This document shows positions 8,268 to 61,800 of a stretch of DNA of 64,000 nucleotides, piece after piece. The number at the start of each line of letters is the position of its first letter. Within the stretch, counting starts at the first letter, position 1. The translations under genes and the position numbers were made by a program. The notes beneath the pieces were generated by a model. The model was not told the DNA's origin. It searched no databases and was given only the letters and a program-made list of their open reading frames with translations. The stretch lies in IMG/VR virus record IMGVR_UViG_3300045974_000132, positions 124,001-188,000 of that record. The stretch is one strand, 5' to 3'.

Positions 8268-8296
8268 ATTATACAGTATTCTTTACAGTTTGTCAA
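8268..8296 (-). promoter_or_regulatory. consensus sigma70 promoter
   Basis: TTGACA-N17-TATAAT on the minus strand; the spacer contains the recurrent AACTGTAAA box. Confidence 0.85.
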
Positions 8297-14930: not shown

Positions 14931-15710
14931 TTACTTGTATATTGATACCAAGTTGGAGAACCTATCTTTGTTACTCTTTACAATTTTGTCAAATTCATCA
15001 AAGGGAACTAAGATGTTGGCACACTCAGTTTTATCCAAGTAGCAGTGTATGTATTTTAGAATCTCACCATACATGCCCGGATCACCGTTGATAGCTTCTG
15101 CAAAACTAGAAGGGAGGCCCCATTCCTTCATCAAAGAAACTGATATAAGGGAAGCTATCTCTTCAGAAACCTTAGCATACTCTACAATAGGCGTAGAGGT
15201 TTGCTCGAAGTAATCAATGATCGGAAGGCAACCTATGCTGTGCAAGATACCAATAATCATTGCAACGTTCGGATCATAACGACGATCCTCAAGATGGGCT
15301 GTAAGCAAGTGAGACAGAGCACCTACTTCTACACTATGATGCCATGTCTCTTCGAGCAACACCTTAAGATCAAAGTTCTTAGACCTGAACATATCCCTAA
15401 TTGCGATGCTGATAGCCAAGTTCTTTACCAACACAATACCTAGAATCGACAAAGCTGTATATAGCGATGTGATGGGCTTGATGGGCTTAAGAGCGGGGCT
15501 ATTTACCACCTGAAGTAATCGAGCAGCTAAGGTTTGATGCGATTCAATAGCGGCTGAAATATCTACCAAGCCCTTAGTGTCGTCATTCATCAAAGCATTG
15601 ATCTTCAAAACTACTTCAGGTGAAGCAGGTAGCCTCAAACTCTTTGCAGAAAGGCGCTCAATAATGTCTTGAGATAATACACTTATTCCATCACTGGGCA
15701 GAGGGGACAT
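14931..15710 (-). CDS. HDOD domain protein
   Basis: LPASPEV...LAARLLQVVNSP...ALSILG...WHHSVEV...GILHSIG...WGLP. Confidence 0.88.
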   Translation of the reverse strand: MSPLPSDGISVLSQDIIERLSAKSLRLPASPEVVLKINALMNDDTKGLVDISAAIESHQTLAARLLQVVNSPALKPIKPITSLYTALSILGIVLVKNLAISIAIRDMFRSKNFDLKVLLEETWHHSVEVGALSHLLTAHLEDRRYDPNVAMIIGILHSIGCLPIIDYFEQTSTPIVEYAKVSEEIASLISVSLMKEWGLPSSFAEAINGDPGMYGEILKYIHCYLDKTECANILVPFDEFDKIVKSNKDRFSNLVSIYK

Positions 15711-17178
15711 CGTCAGGTACTCCCAAAAATTCATACAGTTGAGTTAGAGGTAGAGGCTTAGATATGTAGTAGCCTTGAACTAGGTCGCACTTTAAAGCGC
15801 GTAGAGCATCCTCTGTTTTTTGATCTTCTACACCTTCTGCACACACTGTACAACCTACGCTATGTGCCAACTGAATGATAGAACTTATGATATTGTAGTC
15901 CTGCTTATTCTCAAGCATCAAGGCTACGAAGGACTGGTCAATCTTAATTTCCTTAACAGGCAGACTCTTTAGATACACAAGAGAAGACTGACCAATACCA
16001 AAGTCATCAATCGAGATTGACAAGCCTAGCATGTCTAAACAAAGGAGAATCTTGATGAATTCCTCACTACCTTGATTCAGGGAAGTTTCAGTTACTTCCA
16101 ATATCAAGTTTTGTGGATCAATCGTATGTGTAGCAAGCTCTTTTGATATATGGAGTATCAAGTCACCCTGTGCTAAACTATACGGTGAGATATTGACAGA
16201 CACATTGGTAAGTACGCCTAACTCACTCAACTTAACAAAGTCGTCTAGTGCTTGATGCACAACCCAGTTTGTTAAGGTCTTAATCAGGCCAGTATGCTCG
16301 GCAATAGGTATAAACTTACTAGGAGGTATTTCACCTAGTAGAGCATGCGTCCATCTAGCTAAAGCTTCGATACCTACAATCTTACCAGTCGTAAGACTCT
16401 TCTTAGGTTGATAGTGCAGTTTGAGTTCACCTGCTTCAACTGCTTGCCTTAGATCAGCCCGCAGAGTAAGAGACTCGATTGAACTCACGTCCTGGTCCTT
16501 ATCATAGATAAAGAATCCTAGACGGCCATTCTTCGCCGTGTACATTGCAACGTCTGCACACTTAACTAGATCAACGGCTGTAACACCGTGTGCTGGGTAT
16601 AAAGCGATACCCAAGCTTGCACCTACTTCCGAGATACTCTCATTGAGTTTAAACGGAGCATCAAAAGAATGCAGCAATCGGTTGGCAATAGAGGAGAGAT
16701 TTACATCACTCTCAAAATTGGTAAAGATGAAGGCGAATTCATCACCGCCTATACGAGCTAGGTAGTCATGATTACGTAAACCTTTTGACAAACGATGGGC
16801 AACTTGCTTTAGGAGTTCATCTCCTACTAAGTGCCCCATTGTGTCATTCACGATTTTAAACTTATTCAGATCCAACAACATCACAGCTATTGTTTTATTT
16901 TCAGGAGAAGCTAATATCTTTTGTAGGATGTCATTGTATGAAGATCGGTTTAGCAAGCCTGTTAAAGGATCGTGCCTTGCTTTATACTCTAATACCTTAG
17001 TTTTCTTATATAGTTTTTTAAGGTAGAGGCCAAATAATACGGTAACGATTAAACTTGATACAGCTACAGCTATAGCAAGCTGCCTATCACCTACGGCTAA
17101 AGCGGCACTTGAAACTATTACGTTTAGTACCACAGAGCCTATAGGTAGGACTTTTCTGTATATATCTTCGGAAAGCAT
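15691..17178 (-). CDS. membrane-anchored GGDEF-EAL diguanylate cyclase/phosphodiesterase
   Basis: Two N-terminal TM helices, HDPLTGLLNR, DLNKFKIVND, RxxD I-site, GGDEF, EALARW, EVTE, DDFG, KID, EGVE, QGY. Confidence 0.95.
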   Translation of the reverse strand: MLSEDIYRKVLPIGSVVLNVIVSSAALAVGDRQLAIAVAVSSLIVTVLFGLYLKKLYKKTKVLEYKARHDPLTGLLNRSSYNDILQKILASPENKTIAVMLLDLNKFKIVNDTMGHLVGDELLKQVAHRLSKGLRNHDYLARIGGDEFAFIFTNFESDVNLSSIANRLLHSFDAPFKLNESISEVGASLGIALYPAHGVTAVDLVKCADVAMYTAKNGRLGFFIYDKDQDVSSIESLTLRADLRQAVEAGELKLHYQPKKSLTTGKIVGIEALARWTHALLGEIPPSKFIPIAEHTGLIKTLTNWVVHQALDDFVKLSELGVLTNVSVNISPYSLAQGDLILHISKELATHTIDPQNLILEVTETSLNQGSEEFIKILLCLDMLGLSISIDDFGIGQSSLVYLKSLPVKEIKIDQSFVALMLENKQDYNIISSIIQLAHSVGCTVCAEGVEDQKTEDALRALKCDLVQGYYISKPLPLTQLYEFLGVPDDVPSAQ

Positions 17179-28492: not shown

Positions 28493-29592
28493 GTGATACT
28501 CCTTGGTTGATCGTCGTTTGTGTTATTTAGTTTTTACAGTTTCTTCATCAAGCATCCCCAACCAGCGTAGCGTTTTCAGATGCTGATTCCATAGAGCGGC
28601 CATCGGAGGGTTAACATACGTTCCCCGCATGTGATGCTGTGTCAAGTTACGACCACTCTGCATTTCTTCAAAAGCAATTCGTGCAGTTGCAATTGTTATC
28701 TTCGTAGGAAGAGTACGAAGGGAATTGTCATTGTGACAAACTGGACAACTACCTTGTATAGATGAATAGGTCATCCTCCTCCTCGTCATCATCAATATCA
28801 GGGAGCTCGATCTTGCTGTAAGGGCCGCAGTTGCTCTCGTACATCACCCCATTGATTTCTACCTTCAAACCCATTTCAACAAGCAAGTCCCGCAATAGCG
28901 TATTGATAGTACCGTCGGGCTTACGAAGCTTCTCCATGTAATTAGGATATAGCTCCTGAGCTTGGTCTATTATAATAATATTACCTTGAACTGAAATACG
29001 CATAATCAAAGCTCCTTATAGACTGGCACACTCATTGAGCATTGTATTAAAGCCTAGCTCTGTTATGTGCCATAACTTAGGTCTTACCTTACCTTTAGCA
29101 GGGCCACGTATATGATAGCAGAAACCTTTACATTCAAGTTGCTGCAACATACTACCTATCACATGAGCAGGTGTAAAAACAGAAGCGTGTCTAAACCCAG
29201 ATACAACACCAGGCACAAGCTTGTTAGCTAGGTTTGGGCCCTCTGCTAAATTCGAGAGTAGCTTAATTTGCTTTGGTGTCATTAGGAGGAACCTCACCAC
29301 ATACAACTATACCATCAACGATAACAGTAAGCTTGATTGTGCCGTATTCGCTGGCTAGAAGTTCATCCTTACCATCCCAGCGATTCCAAAGTTCCCAGCC
29401 ACCCATACGAGTGCAAGTAAGCATAAGGCCATAACTAACATCGAACAGTCGATAGCGATTACCGCCAAACTCCACTTCCACATCATGGTAGCTGCGTACT
29501 TGAGGAATAACTTTAGGGACATCCGACATGCTAGTCTCCGAACGTGACAATAGGCGCTTCGGCGCCTACTAAGTTTTAAATACTTCAGTAAT

Positions 29593-33205: not shown

Positions 33206-33590
33206 GCCGCTCACCTATTTTGGTAATAAGGACTCCGTCATTATCAGGAGAGTGAGCGGCTTAACAAACCAAAGTCTGTTAGTGACCCCATCCGTTTAGG
33301 TGCTGTTAGGCAGCCTTCCGGAAAGACGCATCATTCGCGGCAATTACAAGTTTAGCCCGGTTTAACGAGAGTACAATGCTCGGATCGTTCTTTATCAACT
33401 ACTCATGCCCAATCGAAACCAGGTCAGGCCCATCAGGATCGTTCTATGTATCACCCACCCCGGTGACCTCAGCCTTGCGGTAGGACCTTTCGGCACACAG
33501 AACGATTTTGGTGGACCTGGGGAGAATCGAACTCCCGTCTTGAACACTTTTATTTCAAAAGTCTCATAAGCAAAGTTGTTCCGGTAGCTA
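33206..33590 (-). ncRNA. ssrA: circularly permuted (two-piece) tmRNA
   Basis: T-arm and CAGGTCC-ACCA (33509-33540) lie upstream of the 5' strand GGGCCTG (33431); G3-U70 pair; tag ORF (A)ANDASFRKAA* at 33306-33341; outer boundaries approximate. Confidence 0.9.
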
Positions 33591-33646
33591 ATCGGCTTTA
33601 CTTACATACGATCATATTCCTTAACACGCCAATGATTACGTGTTAG

Positions 33647-34455: not shown

Positions 34456-34530
34456 TGGTTGAGGATGACGGGATCGAACCGACGACCCTCTGCTTGCAAG
34501 CAGAGGCTCTCCCAACTGAGCTAATCCCCA
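34456..34530 (-). tRNA. atypical tRNA-Ala(UGC), possibly pseudo
   Basis: U1-A72, G3-U70, ACCA; palindromic anticodon arm with a 6-nt loop TTGCAA. Confidence 0.75.
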
Positions 34531-48111: not shown

Positions 48112-48219
48112 TTGTTACTCCTTGTTGATAAAGGTTTGTTGTATTACGTTTGTTACAACTGTTATTTACAGTTTTCGGGAAAACCCAAATTGTACTTCGG
48201 GTAGAACTACATCGGACAA

Positions 48220-55559: not shown

Positions 55560-58500
55560 GTTTGTTTTCGATAGGTAGTTTGGAGGACTTGATAAGAGGG
55601 AAGGCTATCTTGTTTGCTTTGTGTTCAAGAGCTTTAAGAACAGCTTCTTCAAGGATGCGATCCCAGTTTGCTTCAACGATCTTGCTGATTTTGGTAACGG
55701 CAGCATCGGAGCAGATCAATGCGGTTACCGTTTCTTCAACGGCCCCATAAGCAATGCCCTTAGTACCGCTGTACTTACCGTCATTGAATTGCGAGTTGAT
55801 TATTTGGATAGCTGTCGTCCGAGCTTCTTGCTCAATCTTTGCCTGAAGGTCTTTCTCGTTGATAGAGATAGCGATTGGGATCTTAACTTCCATTTTCGTC
55901 ATCCTTGTTATAAGGGCCGGCATTACGCAAGCAGCTATTAATTTTGAAACCGATTACCCTAGTGTCTTCTTGAGCGAAGAGGTCTTCACGCAAAGATACA
56001 ATGTTATTGGTAATCTTCAGCAGGTTCTTGATCCAGCGAGACATGATAGCTGTATGGCTTGAAGACACCATTGCATCTTCTGGGAAACCAAGCAGCGGCT
56101 CAGAATGACGATTGGTAAAAGCTTCTTGCGTCCATTCTGTCTCAGCGCAGATTTCACCCAGGCGCTTACTACAGTCATGGGCCTTGTACATCAAGCAAGC
56201 AAGTTCTTCGGCTGACACAGATACCGTCATGTTCTTGATCTTACGGATTTCTTGCAGCTTGGCAGCACTGTCTTCAAAGTGTTCATCTGCAAGACTGAGG
56301 ACTCCAATGTACTCGCCTGGATTATCAGACCAGTCAGAGCAGTCATCGACAAGAACGCGCATGTCGTAACCAGTGTCACGATCAAAATCTTTTGTGATCC
56401 AAACGTCACCCATGCGAGAAGCGCCGGTCATGCGAAAACGTTTACCTTCATACGTGCAAAACAACTTGTGTTTTTTAATCCACTCAGGCCAATCCATTTG
56501 AAAGACAGCGGCCAGCCTGTATAAGAACAGACAGAAACGAGCATACTTTTGTCCAACAGATTGTTTGCCCGTATCAAAAGCATCCACCCAGTCATCTACA
56601 TGAGTAGGATCTTTCTTTTCTGCACTACTTTTGTTCTTTGTCATTTTGTTCTTTCAAGTTCACGTTTGAAGTAAAGTTAGGTTTGAGCTTTTCCAGAAGT
56701 TCTGGTGTAAACTCAATAATTTCAACAGGCTTACGTATGCAAGTACGAAAAATCCGTGACTGAGATTGAAACTCCTCGAGCGAAGAACCGTAGCCTGTTT
56801 TATAAAACTTTTCGCCAGGTGCAGTTTTTAGTATCTGCTCAATAGACTTTGAAAGGTCTACCTTCGCACGACTATTAACAATGCCTAGACCGTAACGCTT
56901 GTTCCACTTTTTTTGAATACGCTTGTGGTACGTTTCAGACATCCAGCGTTTCTTTTTGTGTTGCCTGCCGTACATTGAATAGTACGCATTCTTCATTGAC
57001 TGGTCACGTATAGAATGACCGTGCAACCGCTTTACAACTGAAGCTTTCCCAGCTTGATTGGGAATATGGAATACTGCTTTTCCTCCCATTGCACGAAGAT
57101 CAGCAAGCATCTTTTCTTGATAAGGATGAAGAGGGAATGAAGTACCTATGTCAGCAATCATCTTCGTCATCGTCATCATCCTCGATTTCAATCTCTTCAT
57201 CGTTTTCATCTTCTTCGGATTGAAGCATGTCTGTTACGAACTGAAGAGTTTCAGGTGTTGCACGACTAACTAGTTCAAGGTGTTCTGGATCATACCAAGA
57301 ACAACCGTTAACGGCATACTGCAAGCAACCGCCGTCAAGGGAAGCATCTGACACAACAAAAAAGTCACCACTAGGTGTAAACTTCCTGTCAGTAGTTGAT
57401 TGCTCAGTGAAGTTGACAACGTCACCGATTGCAAGAGATACACAAACTTCAGGCATTTTAATTACTCCCAATATAGGAATTCAGAAGAGTACGTGCATGT
57501 AAAACAGATGTATTCCACTCACCTGCAATGGATACATACAGTAAGTCTTTAGCACACTCACGGAGGCGCGTTTCAGACAGATCATACGCCAGACACCAAT
57601 ACAAACGAGCAGGTGTCTTTGTCCAGTATTCGCCAAATTGATGTTCAAGTGTTACAGCATTCCACTTTGCAAGAAACTCTTCAGGCGTCTTTACTTCACC
57701 GGCCATACTAGTCTCCTGTGATGAAAGCGATTTCGTGAATGATAGGATGAACGATACGCACAGGCCATACGTCAGAGTCACCGTCGATGTATCGAATAGC
57801 ATCTTCCACCGTATTGAAATCACCTACGTGATTCTCGTAATAGCCTTCGCCGTCAGGTTGTGAGAAGATAGCGATAGGTGAGCGACAAGCACCTTCGCTT
57901 ACGCCTATCGTACTCATTGAAACTTGATACCCTTTGTAAGCAAACTGGGCACACGCATCAATGGGATTGTTCTTGTCGAGAATGACAAAGTCCTGAACAG
58001 GTCGATAACGTGCAAGCCAACGATCTTGCAATTCATTGTAGTTATATCGTTCATTCAAAAATTTGAAGTGAGGAGTGTCATCATCAGCCCAAGTATAAGT
58101 AGCAAAGGGCTCCTTGGAGTAATGAATCGTTACACCGTCACCTGCAAACATAACGGTTTCAACAATATGAAGAGGGATGCCGATTTTGCTGAGTTGATAC
58201 AAAAGCTTGCCTGCACAGCGACCAGCACTGCGATATTCACCATAAGCCATTTTGTTTTCTTCCAAAATTGTTTTGTTGACCTTTGAGGCGCCGGGCGTCA
58301 GATTCGAGTTTGAGGATACGCTTTTCCAACGCTTCTTTATCTTCCTTGAAACTCGCTTCTGCTTTATCGACAGATGAACCTGTCCCGCAGTCTTGTTGCC
58401 ATCCATACTGCTTTGCAGATTCTTCAAAAGAGTCAACAAGCTTTTGTGAAGTCTTACTGAGTTTGATTTTCGCAGCCATTTTGTTTCTCCTCTTAGTAGT

Positions 58501-59406: not shown

Positions 59407-60276
59407 TTATTGTTGCAGTTTGCGACGCAGATAAGGATACTCAAGGGCTAAGATTTCGCGCAACTCGCGGTCATCATTCAGCCTAAACCAATTCGCTTGT
59501 TTCAAAATCATTTCTTCAGAGCCGCTCTTGATAAACATCGCAACAGCAAGCACCTGATCTAACATAGGCGTGTCTTTCATATACACGCACAGGTTTGCTA
59601 CATGCACATCAGACTTAGTGTGCAGAGACAAAGCATAGGGTGTGCTATGCCCAGGCCGCTCTGTTCTGTCCATTACGCTATGATACGCTTTCTTGATTAC
59701 AAACTTGAACAGACTTTCAGGGTGTGCAACTTCTACAGTGTCACCCTTCAAGAATATTCTTGCTTCTTCCTCAAAGCCTACGTTCAGCATAAGCTTCAAG
59801 GCACGCTTGATCGAACTCTTTGTTCTACGCTCTCTCGCAAGTGCAACCTTCTTTGCAATCTGGAAGCCAGCCCTGTTAATCGGCGGACTAACTCCTGCAT
59901 TGTATATGAAATAGTTTGTACCATTGATTGCAATACTACCTTGAACAATTGCAGTGCTGCTAGTAGTGGTGGGTACGAATATCCCACTACCACCTGAAAC
60001 ATAAAAGCCGTTAGTCGTAGCAGCAGTTGAAGTAGTGCTTACAAGGATGTTAGTCGAAGTGGCTGTCTGATAAAAGCGAATGTCAGTACCGTTTGAGGGA
60101 ACTAGCATATAGCCATTTACAACCAAGTTGCTGCCTGGAGTAGTTACACAAGCTGCTTCTATCTCAGGTGGAATCCTACTCGATACTATCTGAAGTGAAT
60201 TCGCTTCAATAGCAGCATTAAACAACCCAGCAGCTACTGGCGGATTTTGATAGGTTGTTTGTGCTTGAACAGGCAT
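59407..60276 (-). CDS. hypothetical protein with C-terminal LCV...PxxDxxLA...AN domain
   Basis: Thr/Ser-rich N-terminus; starts 1 nt after the stop of the GG-ending gene. Confidence 0.7.
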   Translation of the reverse strand: MPVQAQTTYQNPPVAAGLFNAAIEANSLQIVSSRIPPEIEAACVTTPGSNLVVNGYMLVPSNGTDIRFYQTATSTNILVSTTSTAATTNGFYVSGGSGIFVPTTTSSTAIVQGSIAINGTNYFIYNAGVSPPINRAGFQIAKKVALARERRTKSSIKRALKLMLNVGFEEEARIFLKGDTVEVAHPESLFKFVIKKAYHSVMDRTERPGHSTPYALSLHTKSDVHVANLCVYMKDTPMLDQVLAVAMFIKSGSEEMILKQANWFRLNDDRELREILALEYPYLRRKLQQ

Positions 60277-60277
60277 A

Positions 60278-60787
60278 CTAGCCTCCTGCGAGTGGCCTTA
60301 CTGCAAGGCTTTGCTCTTCCATAACATCTTCTGCTTTGCTGAGGCGCTTGATAGCGTCCATCGTGCGATTCTTGGACTGACGTTTGCTCAAATGCGCGTG
60401 GCCGTCACGAACGGCAGACGCAACATCAACGTCGTCCATTGCTTTGGTGAAGCGTTCAAAATCTTCGTCGGAGATGATAAGCGATTCGAGCTTATCCAGA
60501 TTCTTCTCAGTGACCTTGACTTCACGGTACATACGAAGAAGCGGAATCTTTCTCGTAGTGAAGAACGTAAAACCCTCAGCCATTTTCTTGCGAACCATTT
60601 CGAGAATCTTTTCACGGTTCTGTTCGTCCCAGGTGAGCGTAATGTCACCGGACATATTCATAAACGTGATACACGGAATGTCCTTCAGATGCTCTTGAGC
60701 AACCTGCTCGGCATCACAATCAGGGCAGACAACATTGTTAGTACGACCATGCTTTTCACAAGACATTTGGAACTCCTTCAAGGACAA
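60278..60787 (-). CDS. putative ubiquitin-like protein with C-terminal diglycine
   Basis: Ends SLAVRPLAGG, a MoaD/ThiS-like tail. Confidence 0.5.
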   Translation of the reverse strand: MSLKEFQMSCEKHGRTNNVVCPDCDAEQVAQEHLKDIPCITFMNMSGDITLTWDEQNREKILEMVRKKMAEGFTFFTTRKIPLLRMYREVKVTEKNLDKLESLIISDEDFERFTKAMDDVDVASAVRDGHAHLSKRQSKNRTMDAIKRLSKAEDVMEEQSLAVRPLAGG

Positions 60788-60794
60788 TGAATAA

Positions 60795-60824
60795 TGCCCA
60801 GCTAAAATGAACTCTAGCTGGGCA
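60795..60824 (-). terminator. hairpin (terminator or processing site)
   Basis: TGCCCAGCTA/TAGCTGGGCA inverted repeat. Confidence 0.5.
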
Positions 60825-61800
60825 ATTTTACTACACTATCTATTTACAGTATTAGCGGTCTTCCGCTGCAATCAAGTCCTTGTGGATTTCAATTGACAGC
60901 TTACCCGTCACACTGAGCTTGCAGGTTGCAATCAGAAAGCCGAAATTGGAATTGCTGAACTCCACAACGTCCCCCGGCTGGCCTTCCAGAATTGCCAGTC
61001 CTACTGCGCGAGGGATTGCTGTGGAGATTTTCACGTAGTAACGTGACCAGACAAGTTCTTTACCGCGATGCAGTTGTGCCAAAATGGGACGCTTGTGATG
61101 CTTAACAGCAGGCATTTTATTCTTCCTTGACGTTGTGGGAGTGAAAGTGAAAGTTTCAACAAAATGATGTAGGATACTCGATACTGACTTGAATACCCTA
61201 CCGCGTTTGTCAACTACCTGATCGACTCAACGTTACGTGATACGGTTCTTTGGGATGATTCTCAAAGCAGGTAGCACAGAATAACACGCGCCATTCAAGC
61301 TGCACTTCAATAACAGCAGCAGACTCCGCACTGACCAGCCACGCAAGGAGCAACTTGCTATCAAGACTGCTTCCATCTGTATAGAAAGCGGGATCAAAAG
61401 CCCCATTCATTTCCAGATACAGTGCAGTTTGCTCCTTCAGCTTGGTTTGAAATGCTGCAAGCTTAGGTGAGCGTAAGATCGCTTTGTCTGCAATTTTTCT
61501 AGCACCTGCTACAATCTCATCCCAATTCATCGGGGGCTTTTCCATTTCAAAACTCCTTTTTAGGGTTACGATACACCACTTGTTCCAGAAGCGGTGCAAT
61601 GTCTGCATCAAGAGCAACTTCGCGCATTTCAAGTTCGTCGCGCTTGGCCAACAACGGCGCAATTTGCTCAACCATGATTATTCGGATTTGAAGATCAACT
61701 GCTCTACGTGCAGCAGCAACCCTTTGACGCTCAGAATCCAGGATTGCAATCTTCAGCCCTTCTGCACTAACTTTTGATTCCTGGATAACATAATTCACAG

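What the first reader, a model, noticed from the sequence alone, without database searches (positions are those of the whole stretch)
59407..60787. Candidate phage ubiquitin-like conjugation pair: GG-ending protein plus Cys-containing partner
Seen: the upstream protein ends in a beta-strand-PLAGG tail like MoaD/ThiS/Ubl modifiers. The next gene starts 1 nt later and has a compact C-terminal domain with LCVY...TPMLDQVLA...LKQAN. The pair has its own ACTGTAAA box. No E1 or sulfur-transfer genes are visible in this window. Inference: a minimal modifier plus E2-like/ligase module, or a decoy against bacterial ubiquitin-like defences (Bil, CBASS Cap2).
Basis: inference. Interest (0 to 1): 0.65.

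Follow-up and report, generated by a model that had tools for sequence, protein, structure and literature searches.

The report
Phage ubiquitin-like protein with E2-like partner
A giant bacteriophage carries a tightly coupled gene pair: a small ubiquitin-shaped protein that always ends in Gly-Gly, and a partner with one invariant cysteine predicted to hold that tail; this looks like a stripped-down ubiquitin-type tagging module with no activating enzyme of its own, and nothing like it turned up in the papers searched.

Summary
On the minus strand, gene A (60278-60766, 162 aa) ends ...AVRPLAGG-stop. Gene B (59407-60276, 289 aa) starts 1 nt later.

Neither protein matches Pfam, PHROGs, PADLOC, NCBIfam or PDB sequences. 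Both belong to sizeable phage-only families. A has 401 cluster representatives; of the best 150, 132 end in GG and 12 in AG, SG or WG.

A and B are adjacent in all 14 distinct loci examined, including the cultured jumbo phages Atu_ph07 (gp231/gp230) and Phosso. No other neighbour is conserved.

A complex prediction passed its controls (0.77 vs 0.01). It lays A's tail against the strand after Cys230.

ThiF-type E1 was sought in eight phage records and not found. JAB, MoaE, PP-loop and ATP-grasp were sought in this genome only and not found.

Best reading: a phage ubiquitin-like modifier with an E2-like carrier, activated by a host enzyme. The chemistry is inferred, not shown.

The parts
60278..60766 (-). 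Gene A: 162-aa protein (P0001), predicted beta-grasp, ending ...AVRPLAGG then TAG. The family core spans roughly residues 30-162. Residues 1-29 are a clade-specific extension with a C3-x2-H6...C14-x2-C17 motif.
60281..60286 (-). Codons GGA GGC for the terminal Gly161-Gly162. They overlap an AGGAGG Shine-Dalgarno (60282-60287) for gene B.
   Evidence: The codons vary synonymously in other loci, so selection acts on the protein.
59407..60276 (-). Gene B: 289-aa protein (P0002). Its start lies 1 nt after A's stop.
59881..60276 (-). B residues 1-132: hypervariable Thr/Ser/Asn/Gly-rich region, modelled with low confidence. Other clades have an unrelated ~190-aa N-terminal region here instead.
59410..59841 (-). 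B residues 146-289: conserved alpha/beta domain, pLDDT about 73-96. Its secondary-structure order resembles a UBC (E2) domain.
59587..59589 (-). Codon of Cys230, invariant in 42 of 42 B sequences. It lies at the end of the fourth strand, before the long helix, and is in the predicted interface with A's tail.
59557..59559 (-). Codon of Asp240, invariant and in the predicted interface.
59491..59493 (-). Codon of Asn262, invariant and in the predicted interface.
60843..60850 (-). ACTGTAAA box, a promoter-like motif that recurs upstream of genes in this phage.
60795..60824 (-). 12-bp GC-rich hairpin between the box and A's ribosome-binding site. The whole 89-nt leader folds at -29.3 kcal/mol, z -5.6. 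It could be the terminator of the upstream gene or a 5' stem of the A-B transcript.
60773..60779 (-). GAAGGAG ribosome-binding site of gene A.

Best explanation
A and B form a two-gene, translationally coupled module of jumbo phages.

A is a small beta-grasp (ubiquitin/ThiS-like) protein whose free C-terminal Gly-Gly is its working end. B has a variable N-terminal region and a conserved ~140-residue domain of UBC (E2)-like topology. That domain's pocket is lined by the only three universally invariant residues: Cys230, Asp240 and Asn262.

A binds B with its tail (residues 154-162) running antiparallel to B's Val231-Met233, which places the terminal glycines beside Cys230.

Most likely course of events:
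1. A's C-terminal carboxylate is activated by a host ThiF/MoeB-type E1, since the phage has none.
2. A is loaded on Cys230 as a thioester.
3. A is passed to a lysine of a target chosen by B's fast-evolving N-terminal region.

Shown here: the conservation, the coupling, the single-copy status, the absence of a recognisable E1, and the predicted complex that passed its controls.
Inferred: the beta-grasp and E2-like folds (weak structural matches), the thioester, the transfer, the target, and the host origin of the activating enzyme.
For: Conservation of the Gly-Gly end:
- 19 of 19 aligned sequences end in GG.
- Among the best 150 of 401 representatives, 132 end in GG and 12 in xG.
- The Gly codons vary synonymously, and GG is kept even where the gene order is B then A.

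Pairing:
- A and B are adjacent in 14 of 14 distinct loci, and they are the only conserved neighbours.
- The pair is also present in cultured Atu_ph07 and Phosso.

Fold of B:
- The C-terminal domain is modelled at pLDDT about 73-96.
- Almost all matches covering the whole domain are E2, UEV or UFC1 proteins.
- Only Cys230, Asp240 and Asn262 are invariant in 42 sequences. His185 is not conserved, so there is no Cys-His pair.

Complex prediction:
- Score 0.77 against a best control of 0.01. That mark was reached by 58 of 80 solved complexes and 2 of 110 mismatched pairs.
- The runs agree in at least 11% of contacts, and the partner's pLDDT is at least 44.
- The interface contains B residues 230-237, 240 and 260-262, and A residues 154 and 156-162.
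Against: - No E1 (ThiF) was found in eight phage records carrying the module. No JAB, PP-loop or ATP-grasp_4 was found in this genome. The energy source for a thioester is therefore unexplained.
- The A model has mean pLDDT 54. Profile-profile comparison with ThiS/MoaD gave nothing beyond the last 13 columns, at probability 0.9%.
- One of the three complex runs scored 0.00.
- There is no expression or biochemical evidence. No RNA runs hold this DNA.
Confidence: 0.42

Rival explanations
1. Sulfur-carrier pair. A is a ThiS/MoaD/TtuB-like carrier that a host E1 and desulfurase convert to a C-terminal thiocarboxylate. B uses Cys230 in a sulfur-transfer step for a phage-specific thiolation, for example of tRNA or nucleotides.
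For: - MoaD, TtuB and Mth1743 are among the structural matches of A.
- The Gly-Gly end is the defining feature of sulfur carriers.
- The arrangement resembles moaD-moaE: coupled genes, with the carrier's tail inserted into the partner.
- The window carries 7 tRNA genes. In Atu_ph07 the pair lies near tRNA- and nucleotide-modifying genes.
- In known systems one E1 can serve several carriers (established knowledge).
Against: - No MoaE, PP-loop (TtuA-type) or ThiF was found in the genome.
- B shows no rhodanese-like or MoaE-like match; its whole-domain matches are E2s.
- A hypervariable N-terminal region on B fits a protein-targeting role better than a metabolic one.
Confidence: 0.2
2. Non-covalent plug or decoy. 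A's tail occupies B's Cys pocket without chemistry. B could be a Cys-dependent enzyme kept in check or chaperoned by A. Alternatively the pair could mimic a Ubl-E2 complex to soak up the E1, E2 or deconjugase of host Ubl-based defences (Bil, type II CBASS, Bub).
For: - The predicted stable heterodimer has the tail in the pocket.
- The absence of any E1 stops being a problem.
- Fast-evolving regions suggest an arms race.
- Host defences that use Ubl conjugation are known.
Against: - Strict invariance of Cys230, Asp240 and Asn262 across very divergent members points to catalysis rather than mere binding.
- The family is broad (401 clusters), and its cultured hosts are Agrobacterium and Sinorhizobium. 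Such breadth is hard to tie to sporadic defence systems.
- No PADLOC model matches.
Confidence: 0.2
3. Assembly or structural pair. A would be a ubiquitin-like assembly factor, like lambda tail assembly protein I. B would be a virion or scaffold component whose Thr/Ser-rich N-terminus is fibre-like.
For: - A phage Ubl with a conserved C-terminal Gly is known in tail assembly (Iyer et al. 2006).
- B's N-terminus is Thr/Ser/Gly/Asn-rich and variable, like receptor-binding parts.
Against: - No JAB/NlpC partner and no tail genes are nearby.
- In Atu_ph07, gp230/gp231 lie outside the three clusters that hold most virion proteins.
- Other clades replace the Thr/Ser-rich part with an unrelated N-terminal region.
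- This reading does not explain an invariant Cys/Asp/Asn pocket.
Confidence: 0.08

Closest known systems
Bacterial Ubl-E1-E2-deconjugase operons (Bil, type II CBASS Cap2/Cap3, Bub)
   Same: - A small beta-grasp protein, or a C-terminal Gly tail, is handled by an E2-fold protein with a catalytic residue just before the crossover helix.
- The setting is phage-host conflict.
   Different: - Those are host defence operons, and they always include an E1 and usually a peptidase.
- Here the genes are in phages, there are only two of them, no E1 or JAB was found, and no HMM of those systems matches.
E2-only CBASS (cGAS plus a lone E2; Yan et al., bioRxiv 10.1101/2022.05.25.493364)
   Same: - A two-component system without an E1.
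- The partner's C-terminal tail is inserted into the E2 active site.
   Different: - There the E2 first cleaves a C-terminal extension of cGAS after a Gly, which supplies the acyl-enzyme. A ends at Gly-Gly with a stop codon, so it offers no leaving group.
- The substrate there is a nucleotidyltransferase, not a beta-grasp protein.
Sulfur carriers and their partners (MoaD-MoaE, ThiS-ThiG, TtuB-TtuA; Urm1 and SAMPs as dual-use carriers)
   Same: - Beta-grasp fold with a free Gly-Gly end.
- Coupled genes, with the tail inserted into the partner.
- Dependence on a ThiF/MoeB-type E1 that may be encoded elsewhere.
   Different: - No sequence-profile similarity to ThiS/MoaD.
- The partner is not MoaE-like or PP-loop-like.
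- The partner has an invariant Cys and a hypervariable N-terminus.
Lambda/T1 tail assembly protein I (TAPI), a phage Ubl
   Same: A phage-encoded beta-grasp domain with a conserved C-terminal glycine.
   Different: - TAPI lies between the tail genes K (JAB + NlpC/P60) and J, and carries a further C-terminal domain after the Gly.
- None of that context is present here.
Eukaryotic E2 (UBC) enzymes and UFC1
   Same: - Same domain length and the same order of helices and strands.
- The Cys falls at domain position 85, after the fourth strand.
- These are the only whole-domain PDB matches.
   Different: - There is no HPN motif. The conserved Asn lies after the Cys, not before it.
- No UQ_con hit.

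Membership tests
Ubiquitin-like / ThiS-MoaD beta-grasp modifiers | Beta-grasp fold | tested here: inconclusive
   [not shown]
Ubiquitin-like / ThiS-MoaD beta-grasp modifiers | Free C-terminal Gly-Gly (or Gly) directly after the last strand | tested here: met
   19 of 19 aligned sequences. 132 GG and 12 xG among 150 representatives. G162 is 100% and G161 92% conserved in 156 sequences.
Ubiquitin-like / ThiS-MoaD beta-grasp modifiers | Sequence-profile match to a known Ubl family | tested here: not met
   No Pfam, NCBIfam or PDB-sequence match. hhalign against 19 ThiS/MoaD sequences aligned only 13 columns, at probability 0.9%.
Ubiquitin-like / ThiS-MoaD beta-grasp modifiers | Adenylation of the C-terminus by an E1 | not testable with these tools
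   No ThiF-type gene was found in eight phage records. Use of a host enzyme is an assumption.
E2 / UBC superfamily | UBC fold (helix, four-stranded sheet, crossover helix, C-terminal helices) | tested here: inconclusive
   [not shown]
E2 / UBC superfamily | Catalytic Cys after strand 4, before the crossover helix | tested here: met
   Cys230 ends strand 225-230 and the helix starts at 238. It is invariant in 42 of 42 sequences.
E2 / UBC superfamily | HPN motif upstream of the Cys | tested here: not met
   His185-Pro186 lies 45 residues upstream and is lost in divergent members. The invariant Asn262 lies downstream of the Cys.
E2 / UBC superfamily | Ubl tail held at the active-site Cys | tested here: met
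   Prediction only. Score 0.77 against a best control of 0.01; the mark was reached by 58 of 80 solved complexes and 2 of 110 mismatched pairs; runs agree in at least 11% of contacts; partner pLDDT at least 44. A residues 156-162 touch B residues 230-237, 240 and 260-262.
E2 / UBC superfamily | HMM match to UQ_con or a Prok-E2 family | tested here: not met
   No Pfam hit and no UQ_con hit in the genome at E <= 10. A Prok-E2 reference alignment could not be built, because no Prok-E2_B was found in 401 genomes.
Bil / type II CBASS / Bub operons | E1 and deconjugating peptidase encoded together with the Ubl and E2 | tested here: not met
   Only A and B are conserved neighbours in 14 loci. No ThiF or Prok-JAB was found, and no PADLOC model matches.
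MoaD-MoaE molybdopterin synthase | MoaE-family large subunit | tested here: not met
   No MoaE match in the genome at E <= 10 and none on B.
Lambda TAPI tail-assembly Ubl | Neighbourhood with TAPK (JAB/NlpC-P60) and TAPJ tail genes | tested here: not met
   The neighbours have no Pfam match and the genome has no JAB. The defining context is described.

The most novel reading that the evidence does not exclude
Jumbo phages carry their own minimal ubiquitin-type tagging system: a Ubl and a cysteine carrier with a fast-evolving targeting region. It would parasitise the host's sulfur-carrier E1 (MoeB/ThiF) for activation and covalently mark host or phage proteins during infection. That would be a virus-encoded, E1-less protein-conjugation pathway in bacteria.
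Probability: 0.28. Interest if true: 0.88.

Novelty: new variant of a known kind. Interest (0 to 1): 0.72.

Why it matters
Ubiquitin-like conjugation in bacteria has so far been described as a host weapon against phages (Bil, CBASS Cap2, Bub). A widespread module on the phage side would show that the virus uses the same chemistry. The A family has 401 clusters at 50% identity and occurs in cultured Agrobacterium and Sinorhizobium jumbo phages.

The module would also be the smallest such system known, with no E1 of its own. That raises a concrete and testable question: can a host ThiF/MoeB enzyme charge a foreign Ubl?

Two cultured phages (Atu_ph07 gp231/gp230 and Phosso CDS 346/345) carry it, so the prediction can go to the bench at once. 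Even if the chemistry proves different (sulfur transfer, or an inhibitory plug), two large families of unknown function would gain a defined interaction and an active site.

Tried and rejected
Searches that gave nothing useful:
- Family scans gave nothing for A or B: Pfam, PHROGs, PADLOC, NCBIfam. The same held for long-form B proteins, N-terminally extended A proteins and ten neighbouring genes.
- PDB sequence search with the B profile hit only designed repeat proteins, through a short KRALKL-like helix. These hits are spurious. The A profile hit nothing.
- Foldseek against the PDB gave nothing significant for either model.
- The exhaustive structural search of the full B model was swamped by its long helix 124-168.
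- The ESM Atlas returned only unnamed clusters.
- BFVD returned the Atu_ph07 homologue.
- hhalign of the A family against ThiS/MoaD found no homology.
- I tried to collect Prok-E2 sequences for a profile comparison. None turned up in 401 genomes, so the comparison could not be made.
- A was not found in species-representative bacterial genomes by pattern search.
- The DNA is held only by DNA runs from pond and freshwater metagenomes, with no RNA runs.

Ideas rejected:
- B as a papain-, DUB- or C39-type cysteine protease. His185 is not conserved and no other His is invariant.
- Gly-Gly conserved only because its codons form B's ribosome-binding site. The codons vary synonymously, one locus has a separate site, and one has the order B then A.
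- A and B fused by a frameshift, with B then cleaving after Gly-Gly. The junction geometry differs between loci.
- An activating domain in B's N-terminus. It is Thr/Ser-rich here and an unrelated region elsewhere, with no known domain in either.

Housekeeping: only genetic code 11 was used.

Full report
WHERE IT IS. The window is bases 124001-188000 of a 286,393-bp virus record with direct terminal repeats, rated complete. It holds a jumbo-phage stretch with almost all genes on the minus strand. Identified genes include a split type II topoisomerase and DnaB-like and Dda-like helicases, plus 7 tRNA genes and a tmRNA-like gene. The DNA is held only by DNA runs from pond and freshwater metagenomes, and no RNA run holds it.

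THE OBSERVATION. Both genes are on the minus strand.
- Gene A is listed from TTG 60787. ATG 60766 is the likelier start: it has GAAGGAG 6 nt upstream and matches the start of homologues.
- A is 162 aa and ends ...SLAVRPLAGG, followed by TAG at 60278-60280.
- Gene B starts at 60276, one base after A's stop, and runs to 59407 (289 aa).
- The codons GCA GGA GGC for Ala-Gly-Gly also spell an AGGAGG ribosome-binding site for B.
- The ACTGTAAA box lies at 60843-60850, 77 nt before A's ATG. It is a phage-wide motif: 11 copies, all on the coding strand, against 3.6 expected.
- A strong hairpin sits between the box and A's ribosome-binding site.

NO KNOWN FAMILY. Neither protein matches Pfam, PHROGs, PADLOC or NCBIfam. 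PDB sequences gave nothing real either: the B profile hit only designed repeat proteins through one short helix. The region has no DNA-level match among 50,697 phage records.

FAMILY A.
- The word search found 10 relatives, all ending in Gly-Gly.
- With sequences read from related loci, 19 of 19 end ...[A/S]x[A/G][V/L/M/T][R/K]xxxGG.
- The family scans and the word search had left the protein open, so I spent the single exhaustive profile search on A. It found 401 cluster representatives at E <= 0.001, of which 280 were at E <= 1e-10.
- Among the 150 listed, 132 end in GG, 10 in AG, and one each in SG and WG. The other six are fragments or miscalled ends.
- In 156 aligned members, the best-conserved positions are G40, D41, W46, K61, G65, F68, F69, D112, G161 and G162.
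- The terminal Gly codons differ between loci (GGA GGC, GGT GGT, GGC GGG and others). GG is retained where a separate ribosome-binding site follows, and also where the gene order is reversed. Selection therefore acts on the protein, not merely on B's ribosome-binding site.
- A is single-copy in this genome.

FAMILY B.
- The searches found 64 and then 34 relatives, all of the same family.
- The N-terminal ~130 residues are hypervariable, rich in Thr, Ser, Asn and Gly, and modelled with low confidence. Residues 146-289 are well conserved.
- A second form occurs in loci L010, L017, L018 and L019 and in the phages Atu_ph07 and Phosso. It replaces the Thr/Ser-rich part with an unrelated ~190-residue N-terminal region that has no known domain.
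- Across 42 sequences including these divergent forms, only Cys230, Asp240 and Asn262 are invariant. His185 is lost in the divergent forms.
- With no conserved His, a papain-, DUB- or C39-type protease is unlikely. A lone Cys with Asp and Asn is what E2-type carriers have.

THE PAIR IS THE UNIT.
- In 14 distinct loci, A and B are adjacent. Their stop and start codons overlap or lie 1-15 nt apart.
- In 13 of these loci the order is A then B. In L018 it is B then A, with the two genes overlapping.
- A fifteenth locus (L017) is cut off by the end of its contig, but what follows A there matches the N-terminus of a long-form B.
- No other neighbour is shared by more than 3 loci.
- The contigs that are long enough to judge measure 59-490 kb.
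- Two cultured jumbo phages carry the pair, annotated as hypothetical: Agrobacterium phage Atu_ph07 gp231/gp230 and Sinorhizobium phage Phosso CDS 346/345.
- Atu_ph07's virion proteins map mostly to three gene clusters that do not include gp230/gp231.

FOLDS.
- A: with 11 sequences in the alignment, the model has mean pLDDT 54. Its elements run strand, strand, helix, strand, a helical insert, then a last strand just before Gly-Gly.
- Profile-profile comparison with 19 ThiS/MoaD sequences found nothing beyond the last strand plus GG. If A is a beta-grasp protein, it belongs to a family of its own.
- B: residues 146-289 are modelled at pLDDT about 73-96. The order is helix, four strands, Cys230 at the end of the fourth strand, a long helix from 238, then further helices.
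- Foldseek found nothing significant for B. The exhaustive search was dominated by the long helix 124-168.
- The E2 label is therefore a reasonable reading of the topology, not a demonstrated membership. There is no HPN motif and no UQ_con hit.

PREDICTED COMPLEX. B's domain was folded with A residues 28-162, using my own alignments.
- The three runs scored 0.00, 0.87 and 0.77. The median is 0.77 and the best of three controls is 0.01.
- That mark was reached by 58 of 80 solved complexes and by 2 of 110 mismatched pairs.
- The runs agree in at least 11% of their contacts, and the partner's pLDDT is at least 44. The model supports binding; it does not show it.
- In the best run, A residues 157-160 pair with B residues 231-233 in antiparallel register. 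By extrapolation this puts Gly161 and Gly162 next to Cys230.
- The interface also includes Asp240, Ala261 and Asn262 of B, and the conserved Gly40-Asp41 loop and Phe69 of A.
- So the residues that conservation singles out in both families are the ones that meet in the model.

WHAT IS MISSING.
- A six-frame HMM search found no ThiF-type E1 in any of eight records with the module: this genome, five related virus records (two complete), Atu_ph07 and Phosso.
- This genome also lacks Prok-JAB, UQ_con, MoaE, PP-loop (TtuA/TilS type) and ATP-grasp_4 matches.
- A ends at a stop codon. The E1-free route described for E2-only CBASS, where the E2 cleaves a C-terminal extension to form the acyl-enzyme, is therefore not open to it.

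INTERPRETATION.
- Best-supported reading (0.42): a phage ubiquitin-like modifier docks its Gly-Gly end at the Cys/Asp/Asn pocket of an E2-like carrier. Activation would come from a host ThiF/MoeB-type E1, and the target would be chosen by B's fast-evolving N-terminus.
- Well supported in silico: the specific A-B interaction, with the tail at Cys230.
- Inferred: the thioester, the transfer to a target, and the source of activation.
- Rivals:
  - a sulfur-carrier pair (0.20);
  - a non-covalent plug or decoy against host Ubl-based defences (0.20);
  - an assembly role like lambda TAPI (0.08).
- The small remainder covers something not thought of here.

NOVELTY.
- The library holds papers on the host-side systems Bil, CBASS Cap2, E2-only CBASS and Bub, and on the lambda TAPI Ubl.
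- A comparative survey of 224 jumbo phages that covers Atu_ph07 uses the word 'ubiquitin' only in passing and describes no such module.
- I found no description of this pair. I rate it a new variant of a known kind: Ubl plus E2-type carrier, but encoded by a phage, made of two genes, and lacking an E1.

LIMITS.
- No Prok-E2 reference alignment could be assembled.
- Only the best 150 of the 401 A-family hits were visible.
- Nothing here is experimental.
- Only genetic code 11 was used.

Noticed in passing
window 33215-33601 (-): ARAGORN calls a tmRNA-like gene, flagged as permuted, with tag peptide AANDASFRKAA. It lies among the phage's tRNA genes.
   Followed up: no
window 34456-34530 (-): ARAGORN reports a tRNA with a four-base anticodon 'tgca' and no assigned amino acid. 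It could be a frameshift-suppressor-type tRNA or an artefact. Six ordinary tRNA genes (Leu x2, Thr x2, Ser, Met) lie between 29.6 and 50.1 kb.
   Followed up: no
window, 11 sites, e.g. 8282-8289, 28533-28540, 48165-48172, 60843-60850 (all -): ACTGTAAA, often preceded by AAA, occurs 11 times. All copies are on the coding strand and mostly sit in intergenic gaps, one of them just before a tRNA. Only 3.6 are expected. It is a likely promoter element of this phage.
   Followed up: partly
window 60795-60824 (-): A 12-bp GC-rich hairpin lies between the ACTGTAAA box and gene A's ribosome-binding site. The leader folds at -29.3 kcal/mol, z -5.6. It may be a terminator of the upstream 87-aa gene or a 5' stem of the A-B transcript.
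   Followed up: partly
window 15691-17178 (-): This 495-aa protein has its best phage-database matches annotated as diguanylate cyclase domain or signal-transduction (gmr/cph2-like) proteins, at 33-41% identity. The phage may therefore encode a c-di-GMP-related enzyme. PHROGs lists the family as of unknown function.
   Followed up: no
window 60680-60766 (-), residues 1-29 of gene A: A clade-specific N-terminal extension carries a zinc-knuckle-like pattern, Cys3-x2-His6 ... Cys14-x2-Cys17. It is shared by three close relatives and absent from most of the family.
   Followed up: no
window 57151-57471 (-): A 106-aa ORF ends in a very acidic tail rich in Asp and Glu (about 20 of its last 24 residues).
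   Followed up: no
L002 1741-5941 (a related contig): In one related phage contig the A-B pair lies directly downstream of a gene with an RNA polymerase Rpb2 domain 6 hit and another large gene. At least some carriers therefore encode multisubunit RNA polymerase parts.
   Followed up: no
window 59602-59997 (+), 60311-60790 (+) and similar: Long antisense ORFs overlap genes A and B and recur in related loci only as shadows of the conserved coding strand. They are not genes.
   Followed up: partly
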